DNA of 64,000 nt, taken from the IMG/VR virus record IMGVR_UViG_3300023174_005338, positions 62,001-126,000 of that record. The stretch is one strand, 5' to 3'. This document shows positions 5,628-62,075 of this stretch, one piece after another (position 1 is the first letter of the stretch; every line of letters starts with the position of its first letter). The notes under the pieces were generated by a model. The model did no database searches. It saw only the letters and a list, made by a program, of their open reading frames with translations, and was not told where the DNA came from. The position numbers and the translations under genes are program-made.

Positions 5628-5818
5628 GCTTTTGGAGTCTTAGGGGCACGTGGCTTTTTGACTGCAGGCTTTTTGACTGCAGGCTTTTTGGCCGCTGGTT
5701 TCTTTTCTTCTGCCACAGTTTTGGGGAATGGAAAATGTTCAGAACCTTCGACCTTGTAAGGTGCCTCAGTAGGTTCGGCAGGTTTTGCTCCAAAAATTCG
5801 CTTTAATAATGATAGCAT
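5624..5818 (-). CDS. Small basic protein with KKPA repeats
   Basis: AGGAG RBS; MLSLLKRIFG...KKPAAKKPAVKKPAVKK encoded by a 15-bp tandem repeat. Confidence 0.7.
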   Translation of the reverse strand: MLSLLKRIFGAKPAEPTEAPYKVEGSEHFPFPKTVAEEKKPAAKKPAVKKPAVKKPRAPKTPKA

Positions 5819-5969
5819 GGTAGTTCTCCTTGTAGAATATTTATTTTCTGTTGGATCATTATGTTTTGTTATTATGTGGCACTGCACAATATAAATACAA
5901 AGTCAGTGTTTTCACTGAGAGATTTTGATCACGAGTCAAAATCAAAATACAACCCAAAAGGAAAAAACA

Positions 5970-6650: not shown

Positions 6651-7367
6651 ATGGGCCTACTCATCTACATCCTGGTGATGACACACATCACCATAGCCTG
6701 TGTCACACTTTACTTGCACCGCAGTCAAGCACATAGAGGGGTATCATTTGACCCACGTGTGACACACTTCATGAGATTCTGGCTGTGGCTGACCACAGGC
6801 ATGGTCACCAAGCAGTGGGTGGCCACACATAGAAAACATCACAGATTCACCGACAAAGAAGGTGACCCGCACAGCCCACAAAATGAAGGAATCTGGCAGA
6901 TCTTGCTGGGCGGTGCTTTCTACTATGCCTGGGCAGCCCAAGACAAAAAAATGGTCGAACAGTATGGCGTGGGCACACCTGATGACTGGATGGAACGCAA
7001 CATCTATACTCCATTCAATTGGCTGGGTATTGTGATCATGTTCTTTATTAATTGCATGATATTTGGCTGGGCCTGGGGGTGGTTGGCCTGGGGGTGGCAG
7101 ATGATCTGGATACCCTTATGGGCCGCTGGAGTCATCAACGGCTTAGGTCACTGGTGGGGATATCGTAACACAGCCACCAACGACTATTCAACCAACATTG
7201 TGCCTTGGGCATTTTTCATCGGCGGCGAAGAATTACACAACAATCATCACGCTGATCCGGCTAGCCCTAAATTAAGCCAAAAACCCTGGGAATGGGATCT
7301 GGGTTGGACCTACATCCGACTGCTGGAACGCTACAATCTGGCCACACTTCGCGAAAGGTCAGTTTAG
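6651..7367 (+). CDS. Membrane fatty-acid (acyl-CoA delta-9 type) desaturase
   Basis: Three His boxes HRSQAH, HRKHH, HNNHH plus TM segments. Confidence 0.92.
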   Translation: MGLLIYILVMTHITIACVTLYLHRSQAHRGVSFDPRVTHFMRFWLWLTTGMVTKQWVATHRKHHRFTDKEGDPHSPQNEGIWQILLGGAFYYAWAAQDKKMVEQYGVGTPDDWMERNIYTPFNWLGIVIMFFINCMIFGWAWGWLAWGWQMIWIPLWAAGVINGLGHWWGYRNTATNDYSTNIVPWAFFIGGEELHNNHHADPASPKLSQKPWEWDLGWTYIRLLERYNLATLRERSV

Positions 7368-7785: not shown

Positions 7786-7871
7786 ATTTGAATAAATTGT
7801 TTGGACAAAATCGTCATAAGTAGTTGAGTGGCCCAGAATCTTGTGCTATAATATACGTAGAGAATTCCAAA

Positions 7872-8450
7872 ATGCCAATCATTCAAGATCAGGACAATTC
7901 CGAAAAAGAACCATCACGCCTGTTGCAGGAAGCCGGCATGTATGTGTTCATGGGCGAAGTCAACGATGACACCATCAAGCCCATCATCGAGTGGATCTTG
8001 GTAGAAAATCATGTAGTAAAAAAGAAGAAAAAAGAGTTGTTGCTCATGGTCTGTAGCGAAGGCGGCAGCGTAGAAGATGCCTTTGCCTTGATCGACGTGA
8101 TGAAAGCATCGAGCATAGCAATCAAGACCGTGGGTCTGGGCGTGATAGCCAGTGCCGGACTCATGATATTCCTAGCTGGACATGCAGGACGCAGGGTGCT
8201 GACACCCAACACTTCAATACTGAGCCATCAGTATAGCAACAGTCACGAAGGCAAACATCACGAACTGTTTGCCATAGCCAAAGAACACAATCTCATACAG
8301 TGGCGCATGCTGGAACATTATCGTGCGGCCACGGGCTTGGACACTGACACTATCCTGGAAAAATTGTTGCCACCCAGTGATATCTACCTGTCAGCAGAAG
8401 AAGCACTAGAATTAAAAATCTGCGACTACGTCAGCGACTTGAAAAAATAA
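7872..8450 (+). CDS. ClpP-family protease (divergent copy)
   Basis: CSEGGSV, catalytic Ser in IASAG, His in LSHQY, Asp in SDIYLSAEEA. Confidence 0.85.
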   Translation: MPIIQDQDNSEKEPSRLLQEAGMYVFMGEVNDDTIKPIIEWILVENHVVKKKKKELLLMVCSEGGSVEDAFALIDVMKASSIAIKTVGLGVIASAGLMIFLAGHAGRRVLTPNTSILSHQYSNSHEGKHHELFAIAKEHNLIQWRMLEHYRAATGLDTDTILEKLLPPSDIYLSAEEALELKICDYVSDLKK

Positions 8451-10055: not shown

Positions 10056-10772
10056 TTATATTTCGAGATATTGTCTGACATATTTTTTATCTTGTTCAAT
10101 GATCTCAGTTGGATCAACATCGAGTAGTGTTTTGAGTAGATAAGATATGACTTCATAATTATTACGAACCGAAGAAGCAGATATTTTCTTGTTGTTGATG
10201 ATCACATGATCGTTTTTGTCTCTATTGAACTTGGCCGAAACTGCTTGTAAATTCTGTCTACTATCAAGAAATTTATACAAGGGTCTTTCCTTCACCCAGT
10301 CATTGTGTTGTTTTTTTGATGATTTAACAATAGATAATGGAATGATATGGTCATAATGAATATGCCATTTTTTCTTGGCAGTTCTAGCAGGACAACCGTG
10401 CGAGTTAAGGTGTTGATAAGGACTTTGCCAGAATTCACCAAATTCTGGATCAATGATACAAACTTTGCTATCGCAATCTGTGTAAATAACTTTTGAATAG
10501 TCATAAAGATCACCGTGTTTTTTCCTAGCCCGAGCTATAAATTCATCCAATGGTTGGCGCCTTGCTTGTGCTGCTTTTTGCTTACCTCTAGCAGGGTGTC
10601 CTTGTTTTTGTAAGTGACCCATTGGTGCTTGCCAGAATTCGCCAAACTCGGGATCGATAATTTTGACTTTGTCATGCATTTTAGTGTAAACTGTCTGTGA
10701 GTAGTCGTAAAAATAATTGTGTATTTTGTTTGCTCTTGCAACGAATTCTTGAGTGGTAATTTGTTTAGGCAT
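10056..10772 (-). mobile_element. HNH homing endonuclease with two DUF723-like repeats
   Basis: Two (F)xxRA.K.HxxxYDYS.V.Y...KV.IIDPEFGEFWQ.P..HL...G.P repeats, then YDHIIPLS...NLQAVSAKFNRDK. Confidence 0.8.
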
Positions 10773-10821
10773 ACGGAGGTCCAATGTATAATATGTTTAT
10801 TTATATAAGAAAGATAGAAAA

Positions 10822-11415
10822 ATGAATTTAGTTCCAATGGTCATTGAGACAACCTCCAAGGGCGAAAGAGCCATGGACATACAATCTAGGCTACTAAGAG
10901 ACAGAATTATATTGCTCATGGATGATGTAAATGATCATACAGCAAGTCTTGTAGTTGCCCAAATGTTGTTTTTAGAAGCTGAAGATCCAGACCGCGACAT
11001 ACTTCTCTATATAAATTCTAGAGGCGGCAGCGTTACCGCTGGCATGAGCATATATGATACCATGCAGTACATAAAATGCGATGTCAGCACCATAGTCATG
11101 GGCCAGGCATGCAGTATGGGTAGTTTGTTGGCCACAGCCGGAGCCGCAGGCAAGCGTTTTATGTTGCCACACAGCCGTAACATGATACATCAACCGTCAG
11201 GTGGTGCAGAAGGTCAGGCCACCGACATTGAAATACAGGCCCGAGAAATACTAAAGATGAAACGATATTTGACAGAAATCTATGTCGCACACAACAGCGC
11301 AGGCAAGGCCTACGATGATTTTGCACGTGACATGGAACGTGATTTCTTCATGAGTGCCGAAGAGGCCGTGGCCTATGGTCTAGCAGATCAGGTAATATCC
11401 AAGCGTGACATTTAA
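10822..11415 (+). CDS. clpP: ATP-dependent Clp protease proteolytic subunit
   Basis: LVPMVIE...[53 protein letters not shown]. Confidence 0.96.
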
Positions 11416-20534: not shown

Positions 20535-20926
20535 TGGAATATGATATAACAACCATAGTAGCAAACATCCTGATCGGCCTGGGCCTGGGCATTGGCCTGG
20601 TGGTGTTCTGGGTCTGGCACACAGTAAGAAAATTTGAAGATGAACTACGTGGCTTGGTGCGTGAAACCATCCGGGAAGTTGAAGCCGACATGGTGGGCAT
20701 AGTGGTTGAAGAAGATGCCGGACAACTGTATTTTTATCGTGAGTCTGATCGCCAGTTCCTGTGTCAAGGCACCACATTGGCCGAGATCAGGAAAAAGTTC
20801 AACGACATGTATCCCGAAAAGATCGCTTTCTTGGCCGGCGGTGACCCAGCCCTGATCGAGCGATTAAAGGCCGAACTAAAAACCTTAAAAGAACAGGAAA
20901 AGAATGAAGGTAGCATTAGCGTCTGA
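20534..20926 (+). CDS. Membrane-anchored hypothetical protein
   Basis: N-terminal TM helix; TAATG coupling. Confidence 0.7.
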   Translation: MEYDITTIVANILIGLGLGIGLVVFWVWHTVRKFEDELRGLVRETIREVEADMVGIVVEEDAGQLYFYRESDRQFLCQGTTLAEIRKKFNDMYPEKIAFLAGGDPALIERLKAELKTLKEQEKNEGSISV

Positions 20927-21719
20927 CATCCACTTAGAGTTCGGTGCCATTGAACTTGAAAACACAGAATCAGCCGATGTGCTGATTCTTGCTGGCGACA
21001 TCTGCCAGGCCGTGGATGCACTGAGTCAGAACAAGCATGGCGAAGTTGTGAGAAATTTTTTTCAGCAGGTCAGTGCTCGTTTTCCACGAGTGATCTATGT
21101 GCTTGGAAATCACGAGCACTATCAAGGGGACTATGCCCGCAGCCGCGAACGCCTGCAGGCCATGTTAGATGATCTTGATTGTAAAAACGTTCATTTGTTG
21201 GAAAAAGATACCATGGTCATAGATGATGTGACTTTTGTGGGTGGCACCTTGTGGACTGACTTCAACCGCGAGGACAGCCTGACCATGTGGAATGCCAGCC
21301 GGAGCATGAATGATTACAGAGTGTGTAAAAACAGTGGTCGTGGTATCAGTGGTGGTGGATATGCCAGCCGACTACAGCCAGAAGACACCTTGGCTGATCA
21401 TAGAGCCATGCTGGACTACGTGCGGATGGTTACCGAAGGACAAGCAGATCGGAAGTTTGTGGTGGCAGTGCATCATGCGCCCAGCAGTGCCAGCGTGGCT
21501 GCGTGCTACAAGGGCGACTTGTTGATGAATGGCAACTTCTACACAGACCTCAGTGAGTTTATCCTGGATCGACCACAGATTAAACTATGGGTTCATGGTC
21601 ACATGCACAATGTAAGTGATTATGAAATTGGCACCACTAGAGTGGTCTGCAATCCTAGAGGATATGTGGGTCACGAGCGTCGTGCCGAAATGTTTGAACT
21701 TAAATACCTGGAGGTTTAA
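20904..21719 (+). CDS. Calcineurin-like metallophosphoesterase
   Basis: SDIH, AGDI, GNHEHY, HHAP, HGHMH. Confidence 0.92.
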   Translation: MKVALASDIHLEFGAIELENTESADVLILAGDICQAVDALSQNKHGEVVRNFFQQVSARFPRVIYVLGNHEHYQGDYARSRERLQAMLDDLDCKNVHLLEKDTMVIDDVTFVGGTLWTDFNREDSLTMWNASRSMNDYRVCKNSGRGISGGGYASRLQPEDTLADHRAMLDYVRMVTEGQADRKFVVAVHHAPSSASVAACYKGDLLMNGNFYTDLSEFILDRPQIKLWVHGHMHNVSDYEIGTTRVVCNPRGYVGHERRAEMFELKYLEV

Positions 21720-31457: not shown

Positions 31458-31752
31458 GTTCGCATTTTAGAGTTTGATAGTCTTGTATGGTACTGACCGT
31501 TGGTGTGGTCCGAGCATCATAATGGCTTTCCATGGTCTGCCATTCTTCTTCGTCCACAGCTGAAGTCACAATCAATTCATATTCGTGACCATCGGCACTA
31601 TACAATTTTATAGTTTCAAATCCAAATCCGCCTGCGGCAGCGTTTTTGGCCGCTTCAGCAAGACCCTTCAAGGCCTGACGATCTGCTACTATGTAACCGG
31701 TGCCTCGAGGACCGGTGGGTGGATACATGTGTAATCTTCCTGTGGGTTTCAT
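31444..31752 (-). CDS. Hypothetical protein
   Basis: ATGA-coupled to dnaE. Confidence 0.65.
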   Translation of the reverse strand: MKPTGRLHMYPPTGPRGTGYIVADRQALKGLAEAAKNAAAGGFGFETIKLYSADGHEYELIVTSAVDEEEWQTMESHYDARTTPTVSTIQDYQTLKCELSSS

Positions 31753-33422
31753 TGATAGTGTTCTATGTCCTTTAAGTCTAGCTTCTTGTGTTTATACACT
31801 GTAACATATTCTGAATTATTTTTGTACCCCAGTTTGCCCTGACCCCAGAGTATGGGTTGATCATGAAAGCTAGCCGCATGTGGTAGGATTACATCAAGAT
31901 AACGACCATTGCCAGTACCTAGTGTAACAAAGGTTATGTATTTCTTTCGGTCGGATTTGAATACTCTATAGTTGGCTACTAGGCCGCAGAACTCCACAGT
32001 TCCTGGGCCACGTCGTTCTTGACAGGCCGGAATGAATCTTTGACTTGACCAGCGACCGTTGGCACGCAGTTCGGCCACTTCACCACCTTCGGTCACAGCA
32101 GGCACAGCACCAGCCAACTTGGCTTCTTGCCAGTAAACCCAGCGGGCGTAGCTACCTTGGCAGTGCTTGAGAGCCGCACGCCAGAACTGTTCAGGATTGT
32201 GTGCTTTCTGATAGGCCAAGGCCCAGATCAATCGGCCCAGGTTGATGGCATGTGCCCTACACAGTCCGAAATGGCTGAGCTCACGTAGTGCTAAAAATAT
32301 TTCTTCTTTTTTGGGATGGTCTCCTACTAGCACCATGAACTCAAAGATCTTTTCTTCATCCTTTTTGGCAAAGGCTCGCCGCCACATGTCCGCAGTGTAT
32401 TGATCACAACCCAAGATTTCTGAAATCAGCTCTATGGCATCGTCCTCAAACACTATGGTATCTTGCAGTTGATCTGTCGACCAGTCTTGGAACGCTGACG
32501 CACGACGCCGACCCATGGTAGCCACTGGTCTTATAAGTGCTGTGGCCAGCACACAATCACTTCTAGTTCTTGGACGAATGGCCTTGCACAATCGTTTCAT
32601 GGCTGGGCTTTCGGCCTGTGTAACACCCAGCACATTGCCTGAGCTCAACAACTCTGCTGTGGCTTCATCTTCTTCGGGATAGTCCAACAAGTCACGCTGA
32701 TCTATCTCCCACAGTTGACTGAGTCCGCGATTGGCCAAGATATCGATCTTGAAATGTTCAAGATCTTCTATTTCATACTTGTCCAAAAGTATTTGATTGG
32801 TGCCGTTGATTAAACTTTTTGGTACGGCACGATCAAAGATCAGGATACCGCCGCAGTGTTTTGAAATACAACGTTTTTTGCCCATGAGTTTTTGTGTGAG
32901 CCGTTCAGCATCCTCCACATAGTCGGGCACTACTTCTTCAAACCGGAAGTTTCTTTTCAGTGTGCCCTTGGCACCCAGGCGCTTGGCTGCTTCTCTGCGT
33001 GCTGATTTTTCTTTGTACATCACATAGTTGCTTACCCTGGCACTCTGTCCAGGCCAGCGCCGGAATATCCTGTTCATGACTTCTTCCTGTTGCCAGTGCG
33101 GGAAGTCTAGATCGATGTCGGGCAGGTCATCACGTTTGGGATTCATAAAGCGTGACAAGGGTATGCGTTCCTGTATAGGATCCACATCCGAAATGCCCAT
33201 GAGCCAGCATAGCAAACTACTGCCAGCTGATCCTCGAGTGATGTGTGGAATGTCTCGTGTGAGATCCAGGATTTCTCTCACACGCAAAAAATGTCGTGCG
33301 AAATTCAAGTTGGCTATGATTTCTAGTTCTTCTTCAAGCCGTGTTGCGTAAGCTGGATCGTTGGGTAGTTGTCGTGTAAATTTTGAGATTAGTATTTCTA
33401 GTTCGTCATATCTGCTTTTCAT
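31749..33422 (-). CDS. dnaE: Compact DNA polymerase III alpha-like (family C) protein lacking the PHP domain
   Basis: RGSAGSSLL, RFMNPKRDDLPDIDLDF, KHCGGI, FKIDIL, FGLCRAHA, C-terminal OB-like strand set. Confidence 0.9.
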   Translation of the reverse strand: MKSRYDELEILISKFTRQLPNDPAYATRLEEELEIIANLNFARHFLRVREILDLTRDIPHITRGSAGSSLLCWLMGISDVDPIQERIPLSRFMNPKRDDLPDIDLDFPHWQQEEVMNRIFRRWPGQSARVSNYVMYKEKSARREAAKRLGAKGTLKRNFRFEEVVPDYVEDAERLTQKLMGKKRCISKHCGGILIFDRAVPKSLINGTNQILLDKYEIEDLEHFKIDILANRGLSQLWEIDQRDLLDYPEEDEATAELLSSGNVLGVTQAESPAMKRLCKAIRPRTRSDCVLATALIRPVATMGRRRASAFQDWSTDQLQDTIVFEDDAIELISEILGCDQYTADMWRRAFAKKDEEKIFEFMVLVGDHPKKEEIFLALRELSHFGLCRAHAINLGRLIWALAYQKAHNPEQFWRAALKHCQGSYARWVYWQEAKLAGAVPAVTEGGEVAELRANGRWSSQRFIPACQERRGPGTVEFCGLVANYRVFKSDRKKYITFVTLGTGNGRYLDVILPHAASFHDQPILWGQGKLGYKNNSEYVTVYKHKKLDLKDIEHYQ

Positions 33423-33564: not shown

Positions 33565-33696
33565 ATGGAACAATATGTGTGCCAGGTATGTGGTCACGTG
33601 CATGACGAAACCACCGAAGGTGCTTGGGAAGATCTTTCAGACAACTTCATTTGTCCAGAATGTGGTTGTTTCAAAGATGAATATGTTATAATGTAA
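33565..33696 (+). CDS. Rubredoxin
   Basis: Manual translation MEQYVCQVCGHVHD...WEDLSDNFICPECG; AGGAG RBS. Confidence 0.9.
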   Translation: MEQYVCQVCGHVHDETTEGAWEDLSDNFICPECGCFKDEYVIM

Positions 33697-33730
33697 CGTA
33701 GATTTATTTTTTTTTAAAGGAGTAGTAAAA

Positions 33731-34168
33731 ATGGCAAAATCCGTAAAAGGAACCCGTACCGAGAGCAATCTCAAAGAAGCATTTGCTGGTGAGAGCCAAG
33801 CAAACCGTCGTTATTTGTATTTCGCAAACATGGCCGACGTGGCAGGGGCACCAGACGTAGCCGCAGTGTTCCGTAGCACAGCCGAAGGTGAAACAGGACA
33901 TGCCCATGGTCACATGGAATACCTGATCACTGGTGGAGCCGGCGAACCTGGTACCAGCATGCCTGCCAGCACTGTGGCTGAAGCCCTAGAAGCTGCCATC
34001 CACGGCGAAACACATGAGTACAGTGACATGTATCCTGGCATGGCCAAGGAAGCACGTGACGAAGGTTTTGACGAAATCGCTGACTGGTTTGAAACACTAG
34101 CCAAGGCAGAACGCAGCCACGCCAACAAGTTTACCAAGACCTTAGCGGCTCACAAGGCCGAGCAGTAA
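33731..34168 (+). CDS. rbr: Rubrerythrin (ferritin-like domain only)
   Basis: [31 protein letters not shown] di-iron motifs. Confidence 0.93.
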
Positions 34169-36552: not shown

Positions 36553-36570
36553 GTGTCACACTGCTGTAAC
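36553..36570 (+). promoter_or_regulatory. Pho box (PhoB-binding direct repeat)
   Basis: GTGTCAC-ACTG-CTGTAAC: TGTCAC/TGTAAC half-sites exactly 11 bp apart, TAAATA about 11 bp further on. Confidence 0.65.
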
Positions 36571-36591
36571 ACACGGTCCTGTAAATAATGT

Positions 36592-37416
36592 ATGACAGGC
36601 CGCACTTATAGATCAATATTCATTTCAGACGTTCACCTTGGTACCAAGGACTGCAAGGCTGAACAACTCAACAACTTTCTCAAACACCACACCTGTGAAA
36701 CACTTTATCTTGTGGGTGACATCATAGACGCCTGGAAGATACAACAGAACAAATGGCGTTGGAAACAGAGCCATACCAATGTGATCCGTAGAGTGTTGGG
36801 TCATGCCAAACGTGGCACCAGAGTAATCTATGTGGCCGGCAATCATGACGAATTTCTCAGACCACTAATACCCTATGGCATAGGATTTGGCATGGTGGAA
36901 GTGGTCAATCAAACCGAACACATAGGTCTAGACGGACGTCACTACCTGGTCACACACGGGGATCTGTTTGATGGCATCACGAGGATCACACCTTGGCTGA
37001 GTTTCTTGGGTGATAGGCTGTATGATTTTGTGCTGAACCTCAACAGCAGATTCAACTGGCTACGTCATAGGCTGGGCTTTGGTTACTGGAGTTTGAGCAA
37101 GTTCTTGAAATATCGTGTGAAAAAAGCTGTGGACTTTGTGTTCCAGTTTGAACGCAACTTGGCCGCGTACTGCAAGAAGCGTGGGTTTGATGGGGTTATC
37201 TGCGGGCACATACATCATGCAGAAATCCGCGACATAGATGGTGTTGCCTACATGAATGATGGCGACTGGGTGGAATCAATGACTGCCCTGGTTGAACATC
37301 ACGATGGCAGGTGGGAAATAGTTACATGGACCAAGGAGATGGACGATGTGGTTGCTGATGTTGATAGCAGTTCACGTGAACAATCCCCAAGACGTGCCCG
37401 GAAGAGCAAGCATTGA
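36592..37416 (+). CDS. plcP: PlcP-type phospholipase C (LpxH-like metallophosphoesterase)
   Basis: FISDVHLG, VGDIID, GNHDEFLR, HGDLFD, YWSLSKFLKYRVKKAV, GVICGHIH, YMNDGDWVES. Confidence 0.82.
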   Translation: MTGRTYRSIFISDVHLGTKDCKAEQLNNFLKHHTCETLYLVGDIIDAWKIQQNKWRWKQSHTNVIRRVLGHAKRGTRVIYVAGNHDEFLRPLIPYGIGFGMVEVVNQTEHIGLDGRHYLVTHGDLFDGITRITPWLSFLGDRLYDFVLNLNSRFNWLRHRLGFGYWSLSKFLKYRVKKAVDFVFQFERNLAAYCKKRGFDGVICGHIHHAEIRDIDGVAYMNDGDWVESMTALVEHHDGRWEIVTWTKEMDDVVADVDSSSREQSPRRARKSKH

Positions 37417-37519
37417 GTTTGCCACCAAAGCAGAATGCATGCGAGCACAGGCCACAGTGGCCTATTGGCTCAAGTTTGACAGTTTCAAGGTAGTCACACA
37501 ATGCCAAAAACGATCCTGA
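37346..37519 (+). CDS. Small secreted or membrane protein overlapping plcP and the GT4 gene
   Basis: AAGGAG RBS; MWLLMLIAVHVNNPQDVPG...FATKAECMRA. Confidence 0.5.
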   Translation: MWLLMLIAVHVNNPQDVPGRASIEFATKAECMRAQATVAYWLKFDSFKVVTQCQKRS

Positions 37520-38508
37520 TCATAACTGACAATGTGCCCGGTCAAATCAACGGTGTGGTCACAACTTTCAAAAACTTGGAAGATTGCGCTGACCGTGACG
37601 GTTATCGTGTTGTTTATGTTGATCCCAGCCAGTTCCCTAATTTTGCTTGCCCTGGTTATGCTGAAGTTCGCTTGTGCTGGCCGCACGGTATCAGTAAAAA
37701 AATTAAGGCATTACGTCCAGACTTTATACACATCGCTACGGAAGGTCCGGTAGGTTTCTTTGCTCGCTGGTGGTGCGAACGCAATCACGTTCCTTACAAC
37801 ACAAGTTACCACACGGACTTTGCCAAGTTTTTGAAACGCATGTATCATGTTCCGGAGTCTTGGACCTGGTGGTATCTGCGTTGGTTTCATAAAAATAGTC
37901 AACGTGTGTTGGTCACAACTGCCAGCATCGAGCAAGAGTTAACGGCCCGTGGCTTTGAGAATCTTCGAGTCTGGACACGCGGTGTGGATCGAACTTATTT
38001 TTCCAGCAGTCTGCGAACTGGTTCCAATGTTAGACCCGTGTTGCTCAGCGTGGGACGTGTGTCAAAAGAAAAAGGTCTGGATGATTTCTGTCGGCTGGAT
38101 ATGCCGTGGTGTGAAAAAATCGTAGTAGGCGATGGTCCTTATCGAGCCGAACTAGAACGCAGATACCCCACGGTGAAATTTGTGGGCGCACAGCGTGGTC
38201 TGGAACTGGCCAGTTACTATGCACAGGCTGATGTGTTTGTGTTCACCAGCCGGGCCGATACATTTGGCGTGGTCAACATCGAAGCCCTGGCCTGTGGCAC
38301 TCCAGTGGCGGCCTATCCTGTGCCTGGGCCCATAGACATAGTAGAATCTGGTGTAACAGGATACCTGGACTGGAATCTTGCTCATGCCGTGGAACGCTGT
38401 TTGACTCTGGATCGTGATCGGGTGGAACAGGCCAGTCGTCGTTGGACCTGGGACGCATGTTGGCGCATATTCCGTGACAATTTAGTAGACATAAATCGGG
38501 CACAATGA
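37501..38508 (+). CDS. GT4 glycosyltransferase, Agt-like diacylglycerol glycosyltransferase
   Basis: TDNVPGQINGVVTT, HIATEGPVG, SYHT, VGRVSKEK, DTFGVVNIEALACGTPV. Confidence 0.85.
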   Translation: MPKTILIITDNVPGQINGVVTTFKNLEDCADRDGYRVVYVDPSQFPNFACPGYAEVRLCWPHGISKKIKALRPDFIHIATEGPVGFFARWWCERNHVPYNTSYHTDFAKFLKRMYHVPESWTWWYLRWFHKNSQRVLVTTASIEQELTARGFENLRVWTRGVDRTYFSSSLRTGSNVRPVLLSVGRVSKEKGLDDFCRLDMPWCEKIVVGDGPYRAELERRYPTVKFVGAQRGLELASYYAQADVFVFTSRADTFGVVNIEALACGTPVAAYPVPGPIDIVESGVTGYLDWNLAHAVERCLTLDRDRVEQASRRWTWDACWRIFRDNLVDINRAQ

Positions 38509-38568
38509 TTAGGTGCCGCCGGAGCCCGTAACCGGACATAATCTGTTGCGTAAAAACAACACCCAAAC

Positions 38569-38591
38569 GCCCTAGTAAAATAGGGCTTTTT
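38569..38591 (+). terminator. Intrinsic terminator
   Basis: GCCCTA-GTAAAA-TAGGGC-TTTTT; same stem family as 19927. Confidence 0.75.
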
Positions 38592-38609
38592 CTTGGGTTT
38601 ACCAAAAGG

Positions 38610-38638
38610 TTGACCAGAATTTACCGATTTGCTATACT
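38610..38638 (+). promoter_or_regulatory. Early promoter
   Basis: TTGACC-N17-TATACT. Confidence 0.8.
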
Positions 38639-38668
38639 AGTATTATAGTAAACAATAAGGAGCAAAAG

Positions 38669-38941: not shown

Positions 38942-38994
38942 GTTAGCGGGCACTAACCTGCCCGGTTGACCAGAATTTACCGATTTGCTATAAT
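38942..38994 (+). promoter_or_regulatory. Imperfect 16-bp palindrome plus early promoter
   Basis: GTTAGCGGGCACTAAC, 8 bp, then TTGACC-N17-TATAAT; promoter nearly identical to the one at 38610. Confidence 0.75.
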
Positions 38995-39024
38995 AGTTGT
39001 ATAGTTAATAAAAAGGAGCAGAAG

Positions 39025-44425: not shown

Positions 44426-44644
44426 TTGGCCAAAGAAGACGTCATCAAAATGGAAGGTGTTATAGAAGAAGTTCTACCCAACACCATGTATCGGGTACGA
44501 ATCGAAAACTTTGACAAACCCGTTCTGGCCAGTCTCAATGGTCGCATGCGCATGAACAACATCAAGGTTCTAGGCGGCGATGTAGTCGAGCTAGAATTCA
44601 GCCCATACGATTTGACCCGAGGTCGCATCACTCGCCGGAGATAA
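44426..44644 (+). CDS. infA: Translation initiation factor IF-1
   Basis: MAKEDVIKMEGVIEEVLPN...RMRMNNIKVLGGD.V..EFSPYDLTRGRIT; TTG start. Confidence 0.95.
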   Translation: MAKEDVIKMEGVIEEVLPNTMYRVRIENFDKPVLASLNGRMRMNNIKVLGGDVVELEFSPYDLTRGRITRRR

Positions 44645-44652
44645 ATATCATT

Positions 44653-45207
44653 ATGCACTCCAGTATTCGTCAAGACCTAGATCTACTAGAAGCCACTACA
44701 CGTCCGGCCAAACTGGAAACCACACCTTTGCCCTATGCAGAAAACGGTCTGGATCCTGTGCTCAGCAAGGACAGCATCAACTATCACTACGAGCACTTGG
44801 CCAAGGGCTATGCCAAAAGATACAACGCCGGCGAAGGCAACGCCGATTTCAATCGTGCAGGCAGTTTCTTGCACAACAAGTTTTTCCCACAGCTGAAACC
44901 GCCCAAGGGTGCCAATCGCCCCCGAGGTGCTGTGCTAGAGCTCATTGAGTCAAACTTCAAAACCTATGAAGATTTCAAAGAAGCCATGAAGAAAGAATTT
45001 ATGTCTATTCAGGGAAGTGGATGGGTTTATCTTTCAACTGGTGGAGACATTAAAAAAATTGCTAACCATGCTGTGCGAACAGATATTGCAGTTTTAATTG
45101 ATGCTTGGGAACATGTATGGTCTACGGATTACCAGTGGAATAAAGAGGCATACTTTGATAACATCTGGAAAATCATCGATTGGGATGTAGTCAACGAACG
45201 TCTCTGA
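44653..45207 (+). CDS. sod: Fe/Mn superoxide dismutase-like protein
   Basis: LPY...LDP, YHY, LHN, GSGWVYL, DAWEH. Confidence 0.88.
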   Translation: MHSSIRQDLDLLEATTRPAKLETTPLPYAENGLDPVLSKDSINYHYEHLAKGYAKRYNAGEGNADFNRAGSFLHNKFFPQLKPPKGANRPRGAVLELIESNFKTYEDFKEAMKKEFMSIQGSGWVYLSTGGDIKKIANHAVRTDIAVLIDAWEHVWSTDYQWNKEAYFDNIWKIIDWDVVNERL

Positions 45208-45237
45208 CATAAATACTTGTGGGAACACACAAGGACT

Positions 45238-45885
45238 ATGTCAAAAAATTACAGAAAACTTTACGAACGCTATCACAAATGTTGTTTATTGCCCGGAACT
45301 GATATACATCATATCGACGGTAACCATGACAATAATGTTATTGCTAATTTACAAGCGGTAACTCTTCAAGAACACTATGACATTCACAAACAGCAAAACA
45401 ATCACTACGCATGTTTCATGATCGCTCAAAGAATGAAAATTAAACCAGAAGATTGGAAACAGATGGCCATAGAAAACGGTCGCAAATCTGCCATTAAAAA
45501 TAGAGATCAGGGAATAGGATTAACTGCTTGGATCAAGAACAATCCTGAGTTGGCTCAACAAATGAGATCTCAAAATGGAAAGAAAAGTGGCAAGATAGCC
45601 AAAGAACAAAAACTTGGTATACATTCTCTAAGTCCGGAAGAAAAAAAACTTATTGCTTCGATGGGTGGTCAAAAAGCATCTGAATTAGGAATGGGATTCA
45701 AATTAGGACATGCTTCTAGAGCAGGATCAGTTGGAGGCAAAAAAGGTGGGGCATACGCAAAAAAACATCGCACAGGGATTTTTGCCTTGACTCCTGAACA
45801 GAATAAACAAAGGCATTTCAATTCTGTGGTAACTAAAATGATAAAGGGTGGTAAGGCAAGTGCCTGGCCAAGAGAGAAAATATGA
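45238..45885 (+). mobile_element. HNH homing endonuclease
   Basis: IHHIDGNHDNN..ANL..V...EH..IH; C-terminal Gly/Lys-rich repeats; AT-rich. Confidence 0.85.
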
Positions 45886-54488: not shown

Positions 54489-55099
54489 ACGTGCGACTCA
54501 AATACGATCTTGTGTTCACAGCCGGGGTATATCACGACAGCCGCCTGCGCATGAACAACTACAATCTCAGACTGTGGATGATCACCAACTCTGAAGATTA
54601 CACCGATCAAAACACATCATTTGAACGCATCAAGTACTTCATGTACAATCAAATTGACAGTGGTATTTTTATCAACACAGAACACGCCGAGCAGTGTAAA
54701 AAATTTGTAGTCGCTGGACTGAACATCACGACCATGCCAGGAGATCCTACAGACCAATTGGTGGGCATAATGTTATATCACAAACTCAATGCCATCATGG
54801 AAAATCGCATGATCATAGTGGAAACTGAACTGTCCAGTGTCTATGGCGAAAACATGACTTACTTGCACAACGAAAGCGAAAACACCTGGGGCATTGAATC
54901 ACCAGCCTGGTGGAACACTGTTGATCTTGTTCACAGCGACTTTGTGTCCAAAGATTCTGACAACATAGTGTCCATGACCTCTGGTACTACCTGGCGAGAT
55001 TTAGACATGGCCTGGGTCAATAACCCTGATACTAATACTGATGTTGCCACTGGCAACGTCGTATTTGCTGATTTCAAAGCGGATCATGAAGCAAAATAA
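54485..55099 (+). CDS. Hypothetical protein
   Basis: ATGA-coupled 204-aa ORF. Confidence 0.7.
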   Translation: MNVRLKYDLVFTAGVYHDSRLRMNNYNLRLWMITNSEDYTDQNTSFERIKYFMYNQIDSGIFINTEHAEQCKKFVVAGLNITTMPGDPTDQLVGIMLYHKLNAIMENRMIIVETELSSVYGENMTYLHNESENTWGIESPAWWNTVDLVHSDFVSKDSDNIVSMTSGTTWRDLDMAWVNNPDTNTDVATGNVVFADFKADHEAK

Positions 55100-55598
55100 A
55101 TTTGGCGAACTAGTATTCAACCAAACTGATGTGATTGATCTGATCATGCAAGGACAAGATTTGACTGTGCTGGATGGCATGATCGTGGACGATTCTGTGG
55201 ACCTGCATCACTGGCCAGAATTTTTATCAACTGTGCCTAAATTACAGCAACAACAGTCTCGCACCTGTTCAGTCGAAGAATTCCACACACAGCAACAACA
55301 AAATTGGCACATGCCCGAATCATACAAGCACATGGACATAGCCGCACATGTATTGGGTCTGTGTACCGGCGAGGCCGAATTGCAACGCTGTGGTCAAGAA
55401 TTATTGCTGTACCAAGAACGTGACCTGTTTGATCTGTTGAAGTATCTCAAGTATCTAGTAGATGTCATGCAAGAGCATGCAATCATATGGGGAGTTGGCC
55501 GCGGCAGCAGCGTGGCCAGTCATGTGTTGTACAAGCTGGGAGTGCATAGGATCGACAGTTTGTATTATAATTTAGACATCAGCGAATTCTTGCGTTAA
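55086..55598 (+). CDS. N-terminal fragment of a split DNA polymerase III alpha subunit
   Basis: RCGQELLLY...YLVDVM...WGVGRGSSVASHVLYKLGVHRID..YNLDISEFLR; ends just before the PDxD catalytic motif. Confidence 0.85.
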   Translation: MKQNKFGELVFNQTDVIDLIMQGQDLTVLDGMIVDDSVDLHHWPEFLSTVPKLQQQQSRTCSVEEFHTQQQQNWHMPESYKHMDIAAHVLGLCTGEAELQRCGQELLLYQERDLFDLLKYLKYLVDVMQEHAIIWGVGRGSSVASHVLYKLGVHRIDSLYYNLDISEFLR

Positions 55599-61316: not shown

Positions 61317-61493
61317 GTGCGATTCTCCGTTTTGGTTAAATTGTACTTCAACAGTGATTACTGTCACAGGTATTTAGGTTGTAATTTTAAAAAATAGTAT
61401 GGGTACTGATATTTGAAAAAATTATGCTAAGTATTAAGCTACACTCAAAATCCTTCAAATCTGCCGCACAACAAAATCACCATAAATAAAAAC

Positions 61494-62075
61494 ATGAGTA
61501 AAACTATTGATCAAGCCATATTCCGCGACGGAGAAGATTATTGGCAGGTGGCTGAAAATATCAAAGATATCTATCTTAGCGAAGGCAGCCTGCTGACCTT
61601 GTTAGACTTCGAGCGTGTGCTGGACGAGCTGGATTTGTATGCTTTCCGAAACTGGCAGATTGGGGAACTAGTAAGTGGACCCAACATTGGCAAATATCGT
61701 GTGACCTGCATATTCATGTGGCCCGAGAAACTCATGCCCGACCCACGTGGTGCCCGTAGATTATTGCCCTTTGACTGCGAAGTAAAATTCAAAAAAACTG
61801 CCATGAAAGTGCCCATGAAAATCACGGATCCGTCGGACTATCGTCCTGGCACAAAAAAAGCAAGGCTCATAGAAAAGAAAATCTGGCTGGTGCAGATCAC
61901 CATGCCCAAGGCTCTCATGAGCGACATACGCACAGGTTCAGTGGAATTAGAAGATCAAGACATTGATTTAGAAGATCTAGATGATGCTTATGAACAGGAT
62001 CTGGATCAAGAAAGTTATCAAAGCGACCAACAGGCACAAAATGCACAACAAACACTCCAACAACCAGCTATTTGA
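61494..62075 (+). CDS. Conserved hypothetical late protein
   Basis: ATAAATA box 5 nt upstream; LDFERVLDELD...MPDPRGARRLL. Confidence 0.75.
   Translation: MSKTIDQAIFRDGEDYWQVAENIKDIYLSEGSLLTLLDFERVLDELDLYAFRNWQIGELVSGPNIGKYRVTCIFMWPEKLMPDPRGARRLLPFDCEVKFKKTAMKVPMKITDPSDYRPGTKKARLIEKKIWLVQITMPKALMSDIRTGSVELEDQDIDLEDLDDAYEQDLDQESYQSDQQAQNAQQTLQQPAI

What the first reader, a model, noticed from the sequence alone, without database searches (positions are those of the whole stretch)
36553..38508. Phage-encoded, Pho-box-preceded PlcP-Agt membrane lipid remodelling system
Seen: an 18-bp Pho box (TGTCAC/TGTAAC, 11-bp period) at the -35 position, then a metallophosphoesterase with PlcP-type features along its whole length, then a GT4 with Agt-type motifs, then a terminator. 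Known: in proteobacteria PhoB-induced PlcP cleaves phospholipids to diacylglycerol and releases phosphate, and Agt glycosylates diacylglycerol to P-free glycolipids; such remodelling alters surface properties. Inference: the phage uses host PhoB to strip phosphate from the host membrane for its own DNA synthesis while keeping the envelope intact, and may also change superinfection susceptibility. phoH, the desaturase and a second phosphoesterase fit this picture. I am not aware of this complete regulated module being characterised in a phage.
Basis: partly seen in the sequence, partly recalled or inferred. Interest (0 to 1): 0.85.

Follow-up and report, generated by a model that had tools for sequence, protein, structure and literature searches.

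The report
Phage phosphate-stress lipid remodelling cassette
A widespread group of very large phages carries, behind a phosphate-starvation switch, a bacterial-type gene set that should replace the host's phosphorus-containing membrane lipids with sugar lipids, which would free phosphorus for phage DNA. Public records have filed such phage genes under the wrong pathway.

Summary
At 36553-38595 (+) there is a Pho box, a TAAATA -10-like element 11 nt further on, a PlcP-type metallophosphoesterase, an Agt-type GT4 glycosyltransferase and an intrinsic terminator.

The window is part of a 337-kb IMG/VR viral contig, and 504 viral contigs carry a relative. The 62 huge-phage PlcPs form one clade. It is sister to proteobacterial PlcPs, which sit next to agt in 49 of 80 species, and far from LpxH.

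The single Pho box is not significant alone (0.35 expected per window). In about 1 Mb of related phage DNA there are 76 strict boxes, 46 before plcP and 17 before pstS, at a fixed distance from TAAATA.

- a conserved 57-aa gene (37346-37519) that overlaps both enzymes and is kept more often than agt;
- a covarying two-hairpin RNA motif (38492-38542) with no Rfam family, which in relatives can be a stand-alone Pho-box-driven transcript.

No phoH was found.

Enzyme activities, PhoB dependence and the phosphorus-scavenging purpose are inferred, not shown. I found no paper describing a phage PlcP-Agt module; phage copies are annotated as LpxH. I rate it a new variant of a known kind, of moderate to high interest.

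The parts
36553..36570 (+). Pho box: two direct repeats (TGTCAC, TGTAAC) with an 11-bp period, in place of a -35 element
   Evidence: The same motif at the same distance from TAAATA occurs upstream of plcP (46 copies) and pstS (17 copies) in related viral loci.
36582..36587 (+). TAAATA, the presumed -10 element, 11 nt after the Pho box and 4 nt before the ATG. This spacing implies a leaderless or nearly leaderless plcP mRNA.
   Evidence: TAAATA is invariant in 51 of 61 distinct plcP upstream regions, and the ATG follows after 4-5 nt in 42 of those 51. pstS promoters use the same box-11 nt-TAAATA layout but add a leader with a Shine-Dalgarno sequence (SD). The transcription start site is inferred, not mapped.
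36574..36602 (+). Inverted repeat (GGTCCTGT / ACAGGCC) bracketing TAAATA and the start codon. Weak in the window, strong in relatives.
   Evidence: Window: -10 kcal/mol, z -1.9. L010 z -3.8, L007 z -7.1, L020 z -7.5. The arm sequences differ between lineages but stay complementary. Function unknown.
36592..37416 (+). plcP: a PlcP-type metallophosphoesterase (phospholipase C of the lipid-remodelling pathway), 274 aa
   Evidence: Pfam Metallophos. Below the LpxH cut-offs. Metal-binding residues D13, H15, D43, N84, H122, H206 and H208 are conserved in 142-143 of the 143 PlcP-like proteins, as are D46 and H85 of the GDxxD and GNHD motifs. 50-57% identical to proteobacterial genes that precede agt. 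Forms a phage clade sister to those.
37346..37519 (+). orfX: a 57-aa conserved small protein of unknown function. It has its own AAGGAG Shine-Dalgarno sequence (SD), overlaps the plcP 3' end by 71 nt in another frame, and overlaps the agt start by 19 nt.
   Evidence: Present in 74 of 86 viral loci, including 36 with no GT detected nearby. Length is constant. Entropy by codon position is 0.80/0.57/1.10 in this frame. Invariant M1, W2, D16, P18, F25, C31, C53. AlphaFold pLDDT 94.6, fold beta-beta-alpha-beta. No Pfam hit, no PDB fold match, no hit in GenBank phages or bacterial plcP loci. The ESM Atlas holds only viral 'hypothetical protein' clusters.
37501..38508 (+). agt: an Agt/GTcp-type GT4 glycosyltransferase (diacylglycerol glycosyltransferase), 335 aa
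   Evidence: Pfam GT4 domains. Has H104, D253-T-F-G, E261, R186, K191, G18, G82, G85, T159-R160 and W317, plus the motifs GRVSKEKG and FTSRADTFG. These match the mutagenised residues and motifs of GTcp. 39-45% identical to the GTs downstream of bacterial plcP. Phage GTs form one clade.
38492..38542 (+). Structured RNA motif: two adjacent 5-bp hairpins with loops AAnGAUAGA and ARCYCGUAA, and a possible pseudoknot. It spans the agt stop codon.
   Evidence: 18-sequence alignment: 96.8% of cells paired, 7 pairs with changes on both sides, 33 such cells against 7.1 in shuffles (0 of 500), slid controls 27-37%. The covariance model finds 38 hits of 37-73 bits in viral loci, all on the plcP strand, and nothing above 15 bits in bacterial loci. 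No Rfam family. Function unknown.
38569..38592 (+). Intrinsic terminator closing the operon
   Evidence: stem GCCCTA/TAGGGC, 6-nt loop, TTTTT tail. A promoter-like site for the next gene follows at 38610-38638.

Best explanation
This is a phage-borne, phosphate-starvation-controlled membrane-lipid remodelling operon: Pho box/TAAATA promoter, plcP, orfX, agt, RNA motif, terminator.

**Proposed mechanism.**
1. When the infected proteobacterial host is phosphate-starved, its phosphorylated PhoB binds the two direct repeats. They sit where a -35 element would be, and PhoB recruits RNA polymerase to the TAAATA element.
2. PlcP, a Mn-type metallophosphoesterase, cleaves glycerophospholipids into diacylglycerol plus a phospho-head group.
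3. Agt transfers glucose or glucuronate from a UDP-sugar to diacylglycerol. Phosphorus-free glycolipids then keep the membrane intact.
4. The released phospho-head groups can feed the nucleotide pool that a 337-kb genome needs, after a phosphatase step.
5. In relatives the same switch also drives a phage pstS.

**Shown here:** gene identities at family level, conserved catalytic and substrate-binding residues, operon order, and conservation and positioning of the Pho box in a large phage clade.

**Inferred:** PhoB binding, induction at low phosphate, the lipid products, the fate of the phosphorus, a leaderless plcP mRNA, and any role of orfX or the RNA motif.
For: **The element is a phage.**
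- The window is identical to a 337,119-bp IMG/VR contig, and 504 viral contigs encode a relative.
- It has PHROG matches, and related contigs of up to 513 kb have phage-like gene content.

**PlcP.**
- All metal-binding ligands are conserved, and it has GNHD rather than the GNRD of LpxH.
- LpxH models score 47 against 134 and 37.5 against 190.
- LpxH lies on a branch of length 10 in the tree.
- It is 50-57% identical to proteobacterial homologues. Characterised PlcPs share 46-51% with each other.

**Operon.** A GT homologue lies directly downstream in 49 of 80 bacterial species. This is the arrangement described for plcP-agt.

**Agt.** Every residue shown by mutagenesis to be essential in GTcp has a counterpart, and both UDP-sugar motifs are present.

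**Regulation.**
- 76 strict Pho boxes occur in about 1 Mb of related loci: 46 before plcP and 17 before pstS.
- 12 of the 13 phage pstS genes near plcP have a box.
- The box-to-TAAATA gap is 10-11 or 21-22 nt, one helical turn apart.
- Bacterial plcP upstream regions also carry Pho-box-like repeats: 46 of 80 score at least 10 of 12, against 6 of 80 control windows.
- The promoter stays with plcP across at least five different upstream contexts.
- In L053 and L064, plcP lacks its own box and lies directly behind a Pho-boxed pstS.
Against: - No activity, binding or expression data exist.
- No sequence of an experimentally characterised PlcP or Agt could be fetched, so direct identity to one was not measured.
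- The window's own box matches only 10 of the 14 positions of the two CTGTCAT heptamers (the 18-bp consensus is CTGTCAT-NNNN-CTGTCAT) and is not significant on its own.
- TAAATA could be a T4-type late promoter (NATAAATA copies lie before other genes) rather than a sigma-70 -10 element.
- The ATG lies only 4 nt after TAAATA, which is tight even for a leaderless start.
- agt is missing from about 40% of related phages, so glycolipid synthesis is not indispensable to them.
- The host is unknown. The PlcP tree points to no donor lineage.
- Only 64 kb of the 337-kb genome was seen, so a phage-encoded regulator cannot be excluded.
Confidence: 0.68

Rival explanations
1. The direct repeats and TAAATA are not a host-PhoB promoter. 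TAAATA is a phage late-type promoter of the T4 NATAAATA kind. The repeats are then bound by another winged-helix regulator, host or phage-encoded, so expression follows the infection programme rather than phosphate.
For: - NATAAATA copies lie just upstream of several other genes in the window (5892, 7421, 44642, 45210, 53308, 61483).
- The phage group has T4-like traits: a clamp loader, gp38 and regA-like genes in motif-bearing contigs.
- The T4-like pelagiphage Mosig has TAAATA followed 5 nt later by the ATG before its plcP-like gene.
- Only a fifth of the genome was inspected for regulators.
Against: - TAAATA is not enriched in the window: 26 copies against 27.5 expected.
- The repeats match the PhoB half-site TGT(C/A)A(C/T), with the 11-bp period and the E. 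coli-like 10-11 nt distance to the -10 element.
- They occur almost only before plcP and pstS, the archetypal Pho-regulon gene.
Confidence: 0.15
2. The enzymes remodel the envelope for a purpose other than phosphorus supply. Possibilities are changing surface charge or receptor display to block superinfection, or supplying diacylglycerol or glycolipid for phage-induced membranes. Phosphate control would then be secondary.
For: - Lipid remodelling changes membrane protein content and phage-receptor context in bacteria.
- The window also encodes a fatty-acid desaturase.
- plcP is kept without agt in about 40% of relatives, which fits a role for diacylglycerol or membrane breakdown in itself.
- The orfX partner is unexplained.
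Against: - The cassette is physically and regulatorily linked to pstS.
- A 337-kb genome has a very high phosphorus cost per virion.
- No membrane-vesicle or exclusion genes were identified nearby.
Confidence: 0.12
3. The first gene is an LpxH-like UDP-2,3-diacylglucosamine hydrolase and the GT acts on LPS or another glycan. This would make it an LPS-biosynthesis auxiliary gene, as public annotation says.
For: JGI and GenBank annotate the homologues as LpxH. Virome surveys list lpxH among LPS auxiliary genes. The nearest solved structures are LpxH, at E 4e-5.
Against: - Scores are far below both curated LpxH cut-offs.
- It has GNHD rather than GNRD, and D46 where LpxH has E.
- It is separated from LpxH by a very long branch.
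- The synteny is with Agt-type GTs, not lpx genes.
- The GT carries the DAG-binding residues of GTcp.
Confidence: 0.03
4. The region is bacterial DNA, either a chimeric assembly or a cargo island, rather than a stable part of a phage genome.
For: The genes are of bacterial type, and the contig comes from a metagenome.
Against: - The cassette lies between phage-family genes in many independent assemblies from different samples.
- Phage PlcPs and GTs each form one clade, only 50-57% and 39-45% identical to any bacterial homologue.
- G+C content is uniform across the window.
- orfX and the RNA motif are absent from the bacterial loci.
Confidence: 0.02

Closest known systems
Bacterial PlcP-Agt lipid-remodelling operon. 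Characterised examples: Sinorhizobium meliloti SMc00171, Phaeobacter sp. MED193, SAR11 HTCC7211, Pseudomonas aeruginosa PA3219-PA3218, Burkholderia cenocepacia BCAL2364-2366 and Methylosinus trichosporium OB3b (papers read).
   Same: - A metallophosphoesterase followed by an Agt-clade GT4 on one strand, with a Pho box upstream.
- The same catalytic and substrate-binding residues.
- Identity to proteobacterial homologues (50-57% for PlcP, 39-45% for the GT) is in the range seen between characterised members.
   Different: - It is carried by a huge phage, as a monophyletic viral lineage.
- A phage-specific 57-aa gene is inserted between and overlapping the two enzymes.
- A structured RNA motif lies at the 3' end.
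- The boxes are A-rich (TGTAAC/TGTAAT rather than TGTCAC/TGTCAT).
- plcP starts 4-5 nt after the -10-like element.
- There is no dagK, and agt is often lost.
Cyanophage and pelagiphage phosphate auxiliary genes (pstS, phoA, phoH), with pstS induced through the host PhoR/PhoB system (own knowledge: Zeng and Chisholm 2012)
   Same: A phage gene of the host Pho regulon placed behind a Pho box, so that the host's starvation signal drives it. In relatives pstS sits in the same cassette.
   Different: The target is the host's own membrane phospholipid pool rather than external phosphate. The set is two enzymes plus a small protein plus an RNA element.
Pelagibacter phage Mosig EXVC030M gene Mosig_00120 and Synechococcus phage S-SRM01 QPX48289, both annotated as UDP-2,3-diacylglucosamine hydrolase/diphosphatase
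   Same: PlcP-like proteins in cultured phages, 48.5% and 35.6% identical. The Mosig gene is divergent from pstS and also has TAAATA followed 5 nt later by its ATG.
   Different: Neither has an adjacent agt, an orfX homologue or a TGTAAC-type box. Neither belongs to the huge-phage clade. The Mosig genome announcement does not mention phosphate, lipid or pstS; no paper on S-SRM01 was examined.
LpxH (UDP-2,3-diacylglucosamine diphosphatase of lipid A synthesis)
   Same: The same calcineurin-like fold family with a lipid-binding insertion. It is the nearest solved structure.
   Different: The window protein scores below the family cut-offs, has GNHD rather than GNRD, and is separated from LpxH by a very long branch.

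Membership tests
PlcP (metallophosphoesterase phospholipase C of lipid remodelling) | Calcineurin-like metallophosphoesterase with the full set of metal-binding motifs (DxH, GDxxD, GNH[DE], H, GH, GHxH) | tested here: met
   Pfam Metallophos 42.6 bits. D13, H15, D43, D46, N84, H85, H122, H206 and H208 are conserved in 142-143 of 143 family members.
PlcP (metallophosphoesterase phospholipase C of lipid remodelling) | Groups with PlcP-type proteins and apart from LpxH | tested here: met
   On the tree, E. coli LpxH sits on a branch of length 10. The phage clade (99*) is sister to 79 proteobacterial homologues. LpxH HMMs score below their cut-offs.
PlcP (metallophosphoesterase phospholipase C of lipid remodelling) | Sequence identity to an experimentally characterised PlcP in the range seen among them (46-51%) | not testable with these tools
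   No characterised sequence could be fetched. The only proxy is 50-57% identity to homologues in plcP-agt operons of 80 species.
PlcP (metallophosphoesterase phospholipase C of lipid remodelling) | Encoded next to a gene for non-phosphorus lipid synthesis, typically agt, behind a Pho box | tested here: met
   agt is downstream in the window. The same order occurs in 47 of 85 viral and 49 of 80 bacterial loci. Pho box.
PlcP (metallophosphoesterase phospholipase C of lipid remodelling) | Mn-dependent cleavage of PE/PG/PC to diacylglycerol | not testable with these tools
   This needs an enzyme assay or lipidomics.
Agt/GTcp clade of GT4 (diacylglycerol glucosyl/glucuronosyl transferase) | GT-B GT4 architecture, about 334 aa | tested here: met
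   335 aa, with Glyco_transf_4 plus Glycos_transf_1 domains. GTcp is 334 aa.
Agt/GTcp clade of GT4 (diacylglycerol glucosyl/glucuronosyl transferase) | Catalytic dyad His104-Asp256, with Asp in place of the usual GT4 Glu | tested here: met
   H104 is invariant and the window has D253. At that position the phage homologues have D in 21 and E in 16, the bacterial ones D in 32 and E in 13.
Agt/GTcp clade of GT4 (diacylglycerol glucosyl/glucuronosyl transferase) | UDP-sugar motifs GRVAxEKN and FPSxTDTFG; essential residues G16, G82, G85, R190, K195, T257, F258, G259, E264 | tested here: met
   GRVSKEKG at 185 and FTSRADTFG at 248. G18, G82, G85, R186, K191, T254, F255, G256 and E261 are conserved.
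Agt/GTcp clade of GT4 (diacylglycerol glucosyl/glucuronosyl transferase) | Diacylglycerol-binding residues T162, R163 and W320 | tested here: met
   The window has T159-R160 and W317. R160 and W317 are invariant in the 37 phage GTs.
Agt/GTcp clade of GT4 (diacylglycerol glucosyl/glucuronosyl transferase) | Makes MGlc-DAG and/or GlcA-DAG from UDP-sugars and diacylglycerol | not testable with these tools
   This needs expression and lipidomics. Sugar specificity cannot be read from the sequence: Agt1 and Agt2 of P. aeruginosa differ.
PhoB-dependent (Pho regulon) promoter | Two direct repeats related to CTGTCAT with an 11-bp period, ending about 10 bp upstream of the -10 element and replacing the -35 | tested here: met
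   Window: gTGTCAC-actg-cTGTAAC, 10 of the 14 heptamer positions, then 11 nt to TAAATA. The gap is 10-11 nt in 17 of the 27 distinct plcP promoters that have a strict box (23 with a looser box definition) and 21-22 nt in the other 10.
PhoB-dependent (Pho regulon) promoter | The same motif upstream of other Pho-regulon genes of the same genomes | tested here: met
   17 boxes upstream of phage pstS, and 12 of 13 pstS genes near plcP have one. The window itself has no pstS.
PhoB-dependent (Pho regulon) promoter | PhoB binding and induction at low phosphate | not testable with these tools
   This needs EMSA or footprinting, reporters or transcriptomes.
LpxH | Reaches the curated equivalog score; GNRD motif | tested here: not met
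   47 against 134 bits (NF003743) and 37.5 against 190.35 (TIGR01854). The window has GNHD, with H85 where E. coli LpxH has R.

The most novel reading that the evidence does not exclude
The locus is an autonomous, mobile 'phosphate-stress cassette' of huge phages with three layers beyond the bacterial operon:

1. A phage-specific 57-aa partner protein (orfX) that is more strictly kept than agt and may target or restrain PlcP.
2. A new structured RNA class. It is either fused to cassette mRNAs (as the 5' leader of plcP, or in the 3' UTR of agt or pstS) or made as a stand-alone Pho-box-driven small RNA. That would make it a virus-encoded member of the host's Pho regulon.
3. A leaderless plcP start bracketed by a covarying hairpin, so that the phospholipase is translated only from PhoB-initiated transcripts and not from read-through RNA.
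Probability: 0.3. Interest if true: 0.8.

Novelty: new variant of a known kind. Interest (0 to 1): 0.63.

Why it matters
**Ecology.** If the module works as inferred, phages do more than import phosphate (pstS) or scavenge it (phoA): they also take phosphorus out of the host's own membrane while keeping the cell intact. A 337-kb genome holds about 674,000 phosphorus atoms. By my own rough estimate from textbook lipid counts, the phospholipids of a small bacterium hold only enough for a handful to a few tens of such genomes. The pool is therefore worth taking, and that would explain why plcP stays 76-100% identical across this clade.

**Annotation.** Viral 'lpxH' entries, now counted as LPS-biosynthesis auxiliary genes in virome surveys and in the records of cultured phages, probably need refiling as PlcP. 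This changes how viral effects on lipid and phosphorus cycling in phosphate-poor lakes and oceans are read.

**New leads.** The small protein and the RNA motif are both testable and have no known family.

Tried and rejected
**Reaching characterised sequences**
- I looked for a direct comparison with characterised PlcP or Agt sequences. None could be fetched. The one genome-contig scan returned the 80 closest species, and none of them is a characterised strain. The paper with PlcP mutagenesis data (PMC6052262) is not held.
- DNA-level search of the window against GenBank phages found nothing.

**Identifying the new parts**
- Rfam gave no family for the RNA motif or any other part of the window. 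The weak RnaG hit (E 0.66) is chance.
- I considered a preQ1-I-like riboswitch and a fragment of the two-piece tmRNA for the RNA motif. Neither is supported: no Rfam model covers the motif, even in loci that do hold a full tmRNA.
- The orfX fold search against the PDB gave nothing below E 1.6. Pfam and GenBank phages also gave nothing.
- The N-terminal hydrophobic stretch of orfX looked like a signal peptide or membrane helix. The confident model makes it a beta strand, so I dropped that reading.

**Hairpin, host and literature**
- A fixed 5-bp helix between RCGRT (just before TAAATA) and the Tyr-Arg codons shows only modest support: 80.8% paired against 75.3% in shuffles. I do not claim it.
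- Host assignment from the PlcP tree failed, because the phage clade is not nested in any sampled lineage. The only hints are beta-proteobacterial-type two-piece tmRNAs in relatives, and that many of the closest PlcPs come from Burkholderiales, some of them lake metagenome bins.
- Literature searches for a phage PlcP or a lipid-remodelling auxiliary gene found nothing relevant.


Full report
**What is in the sequence.** Two same-strand ORFs lie at 36592-37416 (274 aa) and 37501-38508 (335 aa). The first is a calcineurin-like metallophosphoesterase. The second is a GT4 glycosyltransferase with both Rossmann halves. Upstream, TGTCAC-actgc-TGTAAC (36554-36570) has an 11-bp period. It ends 11 nt before TAAATA (36582-36587), and the ATG follows 4 nt later. 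Downstream, a G+C-rich hairpin with a T-run at 38569-38592 is a terminator-like site, followed by a strong promoter-like site for the next gene.

**Is it a phage?**
- The window has no DNA match in GenBank phages.
- The protein search placed it, at 100% identity, on IMG/VR contig IMGVR_UViG_3300023174_005338 (337,119 bp). In all, 504 viral contigs encode a relative.
- Related genes lie on contigs of up to 513 kb that carry gp38-like and many small unknown genes.
- Window ORFs match phage families: clamp loader phrog_168 at 253 bits, and phrog_3577, phrog_420 and phrog_11543 at 126-132 bits, plus homing endonucleases.
- G+C content is even.
- Context genes include a fragmented DnaE-type polymerase, rubredoxin, rubrerythrin, a class II aldolase, two ClpP, ThyX, UvdE, Fe/Mn SOD, a fatty-acid desaturase and a second metallophosphoesterase.
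- No PhoH domain turned up in any ORF scanned.

**PlcP or LpxH?**
- The curated LpxH models score 47 bits (cut-off 134) and 37.5 bits (cut-off 190). Solved LpxH structures match only at E 4e-5.
- A library-wide search shows a large family: 943 clusters at E up to 1e-30. Its nearest non-phage members are 45-56% identical.
- In one genome per species, the 80 best relatives (48-57% identical) are Beta-, Alpha- and Gammaproteobacteria, many of them Burkholderiales, some from lake metagenome bins.
- In 49 of those 80, a homologue of the window's GT (39-45% identical) follows directly on the same strand. This is the plcP-agt arrangement reported for marine bacteria, P. aeruginosa, B. cenocepacia and M. 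trichosporium.
- Characterised PlcPs are 46-51% identical to one another, so the phage protein lies within the family's normal spread.
- In a tree of 143 PlcP-like proteins rooted on E. coli LpxH, LpxH sits on a branch of length 10. The 62 huge-phage proteins form one clade (SH-aLRT 99), sister to the bacterial set.
- All metal ligands are conserved. The family has GNHD and GDxxD where LpxH has GNRD and GDxxE.
- I could not fetch a characterised PlcP sequence, so that direct comparison is missing.

**Agt?** The GTcp study defines the clade by four things: a length of about 334 aa; a His104-Asp256 dyad; the motifs GRVAxEKN and FPSxTDTFG; and essential residues G16, G82, G85, R190, K195, T257, F258, G259, E264, T162, R163 and W320. 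The window protein (335 aa) has:
- H104 and D253-T254-F255-G256, with E261;
- GRVSKEKG and FTSRADTFG;
- G18, G82, G85, R186, K191, T159-R160 and W317.

Nearly all of these are invariant in 37 phage and 45 bacterial plcP-linked GTs. The phage GTs form one clade. They are far more diverged (50-100% identity) than the PlcPs (76-100%).

**The Pho box.**
- Alone it proves nothing: one match against 0.35 expected.
- Across 85 related viral loci (about 1 Mb) there are 76 strict boxes. Of these, 46 lie upstream of plcP, 17 upstream of a PstS-type binding protein (Pfam PBP_like_2, 126 bits), 3 before other genes, and 10 in reverse orientation a few hundred bases upstream of plcP.
- Twelve of the 13 pstS genes near plcP have a box.
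- The box stands 10-11 nt from TAAATA, or one helical turn more at 21-22 nt. This is the geometry of E. coli PhoB promoters (own knowledge; consensus as quoted).
- The promoter travels with plcP through at least five different upstream contexts.
- Where plcP lacks its own box, it lies directly behind a boxed pstS (L053, L064).
- Bacterial plcP genes also carry Pho-box-like repeats: 46 of 80 score at least 10 of 12, against 6 of 80 controls.

Regulation by a PhoB-type activator is thus well supported at sequence level. Binding and induction remain untested.

**An unusual start.** In 42 of 51 distinct promoters the plcP ATG lies 4-5 nt after TAAATA, with no Shine-Dalgarno sequence. pstS, behind the same box and TAAATA, has a 25-40 nt leader with AAGGAG. 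The simplest reading is a leaderless plcP mRNA. The plcP-like gene of pelagiphage Mosig shows the same TAAATA-5 nt-ATG layout.

There is a caveat. TAAATA is not enriched in the window, and several copies are NATAAATA, like T4 late promoters. The polymerase form that uses it is therefore uncertain.

In some lineages a strong inverted repeat brackets TAAATA and the ATG: L020 z -7.5, L007 z -7.1, L010 z -3.8, window only z -1.9. The arm sequences differ between lineages. Cognate arms pair better than swapped ones, -7.3 against -5.1 kcal/mol, with 0 of 10,000 permutations as low, but about ten related loci drive this result. The 5' arm lies upstream of the presumed start site, so only read-through RNA could form the hairpin. 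A gate against translation from read-through transcripts is possible but speculative.

**A missed gene.** The 'spacer' between plcP and agt has a constant length of 201 nt, measured from PlcP residue 240 to shortly after the agt start codon, in loci that differ at half their bases. It encodes a 56-59 aa protein: 37346-37519 in the window, with AAGGAG 7 nt before its ATG.
- It is present in 74 of 86 viral loci, including 36 where no GT was detected.
- Variability by codon position is 0.80/0.57/1.10 in its frame, both inside and outside the overlap with plcP.
- Seven residues are invariant, including two cysteines.
- AlphaFold gives a confident beta-beta-alpha-beta fold, pLDDT 94.6, with no PDB neighbour.
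- It has no Pfam family, no relative in GenBank phages and no counterpart in bacterial plcP loci. The ESM Atlas holds only viral hypothetical clusters.

The conserved core of the phage cassette is therefore plcP plus this gene. agt is present in 45 of the 76 loci long enough to judge.

**A structured RNA.** Directly over the agt stop codon (38492-38542) lies a motif of two adjacent hairpins with conserved loops.
- In 18 copies, 96.8% of cells pair, 7 of 12 pairs show changes on both sides, and 33 cells do so against 7.1 in shuffles. Slid controls fall to 27-37%. The G:U pairs point to RNA rather than DNA.
- A covariance model finds 38 copies (37-73 bits) in the viral loci, all on the plcP strand. 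It finds one in the 64-kb window, and nothing above 15 bits in 0.75 Mb of bacterial plcP loci.
- Rfam has no such family.
- The motif occurs just 5' of plcP, just 3' of agt or pstS, or alone behind its own Pho box and TAAATA and before a terminator (for example L015, L022, L040, L076). The last arrangement looks like a Pho-controlled small RNA.
- In an independent pattern scan of IMG/VR (at least 120 contigs), 58 of 80 fetched loci have plcP, agt or pstS close by on the same strand. Other settings include a regA-like/hsp20-like gene pair.
- Its function is unknown.

**Mechanism and rivals.** The best-supported reading is a PhoB-switched operon. PlcP cleaves host phospholipids to diacylglycerol plus phospho-head groups, and Agt turns the diacylglycerol into phosphorus-free glycolipid. 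The freed phosphorus supports synthesis of a very large genome, and pstS is co-regulated in relatives. The parts and their regulation signals are shown here. The chemistry, the switch and the benefit are inferred from the characterised bacterial pathway.

The rivals are:
- a phage-programmed rather than phosphate-programmed promoter;
- envelope remodelling for exclusion or membrane building;
- an LpxH/LPS role, tested here and not met;
- bacterial contamination, contradicted by the monophyletic viral clades and the phage-only parts.

**Novelty.** The bacterial pathway is known. Phage copies exist in cultured phages, where they are annotated as LpxH. They lack agt there, and the Mosig genome announcement does not mention them. 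Virome surveys count 'lpxH' under LPS synthesis. Five literature searches found no description of a phage PlcP-Agt module. This is a new variant of a known kind, with two components of unknown family.

Noticed in passing
L086:5565-5937, L031:2661-3097, L053:4386-4823: Related huge-phage contigs encode two-piece (permuted) tmRNAs. Two of them score best against the beta-proteobacterial model (163 and 133 bits). In L086 the tmRNA lies directly upstream of plcP. This hints at a beta-proteobacterial host. The window itself has no tRNA or tmRNA.
   Followed up: partly
window 38610-38649 and 38966-39005: Two near-identical promoter-like modules (TTGACC-17 nt-TATACT/TATAAT, each with an overlapping TTTACC-18 nt-TATAGT) precede the two small genes after the cassette. 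They look like a repeated phage early or middle promoter.
   Followed up: no
window 31749-33422 (-) and 55041-55598 (+): DNA polymerase III alpha (DnaE-type) domains are split over at least two distant ORFs on opposite strands. HNH/homing endonuclease genes lie at 10056-10784 and 45217-45885. This suggests a fragmented replicative polymerase.
   Followed up: no
window 33565-34168, 44653-45207, 7824-8450, 10822-11415, 6651-7367, 20904-21719: The window carries a set of stress and metabolism genes: rubredoxin plus rubrerythrin, Fe/Mn superoxide dismutase, two ClpP homologues, a fatty-acid desaturase and a second metallophosphoesterase. The rubrerythrin-rubredoxin pair also sits next to plcP in the 513-kb relative.
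   Followed up: no
window 44642-44655 and 61483-61496: The SOD gene and a 193-aa ORF also have (N)ATAAATA followed after 5 nt by the ATG, with no Pho box. Starts immediately after TAAATA may be a wider habit of this phage.
   Followed up: partly
L001:4842-4991 (Pelagibacter phage Mosig): In this cultured phage the plcP-like gene (annotated as an LpxH-type hydrolase) is divergent from pstS. The shared 150-bp spacer holds TTAAC repeats with an 11-bp period and TAAATA-5 nt-ATG. The annotation probably needs revision.
   Followed up: partly
L015:4950-5621 and 5797-5955; L214:12668-13789: Other genes sit next to cassette elements in relatives: an integral-membrane protein I read by eye as TerC-like (not run through Pfam), a conserved 52-aa protein just upstream of plcP, and a 373-aa porin-like protein directly followed by the RNA motif. 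These are possible further members of a phage phosphate-stress set.
   Followed up: no
L207, L228, L235, L236, L239, L243 (motif-anchored IMG/VR loci): The same RNA motif lies between a 135-aa protein resembling T4 RegA and a 148-150 aa protein resembling a small heat-shock protein (resemblance judged by eye, not tested). The motif is therefore not exclusive to the Pho cassette.
   Followed up: no
L015:5762-5778 and equivalents in L020, L021, L029, L054: A Pho box in reverse orientation (TGTAATATAACTGTAAC on the minus strand) lies about 220 bp upstream of plcP, with no minus-strand ORF of 60 aa or more after it. It may serve a divergent small transcript.
   Followed up: no
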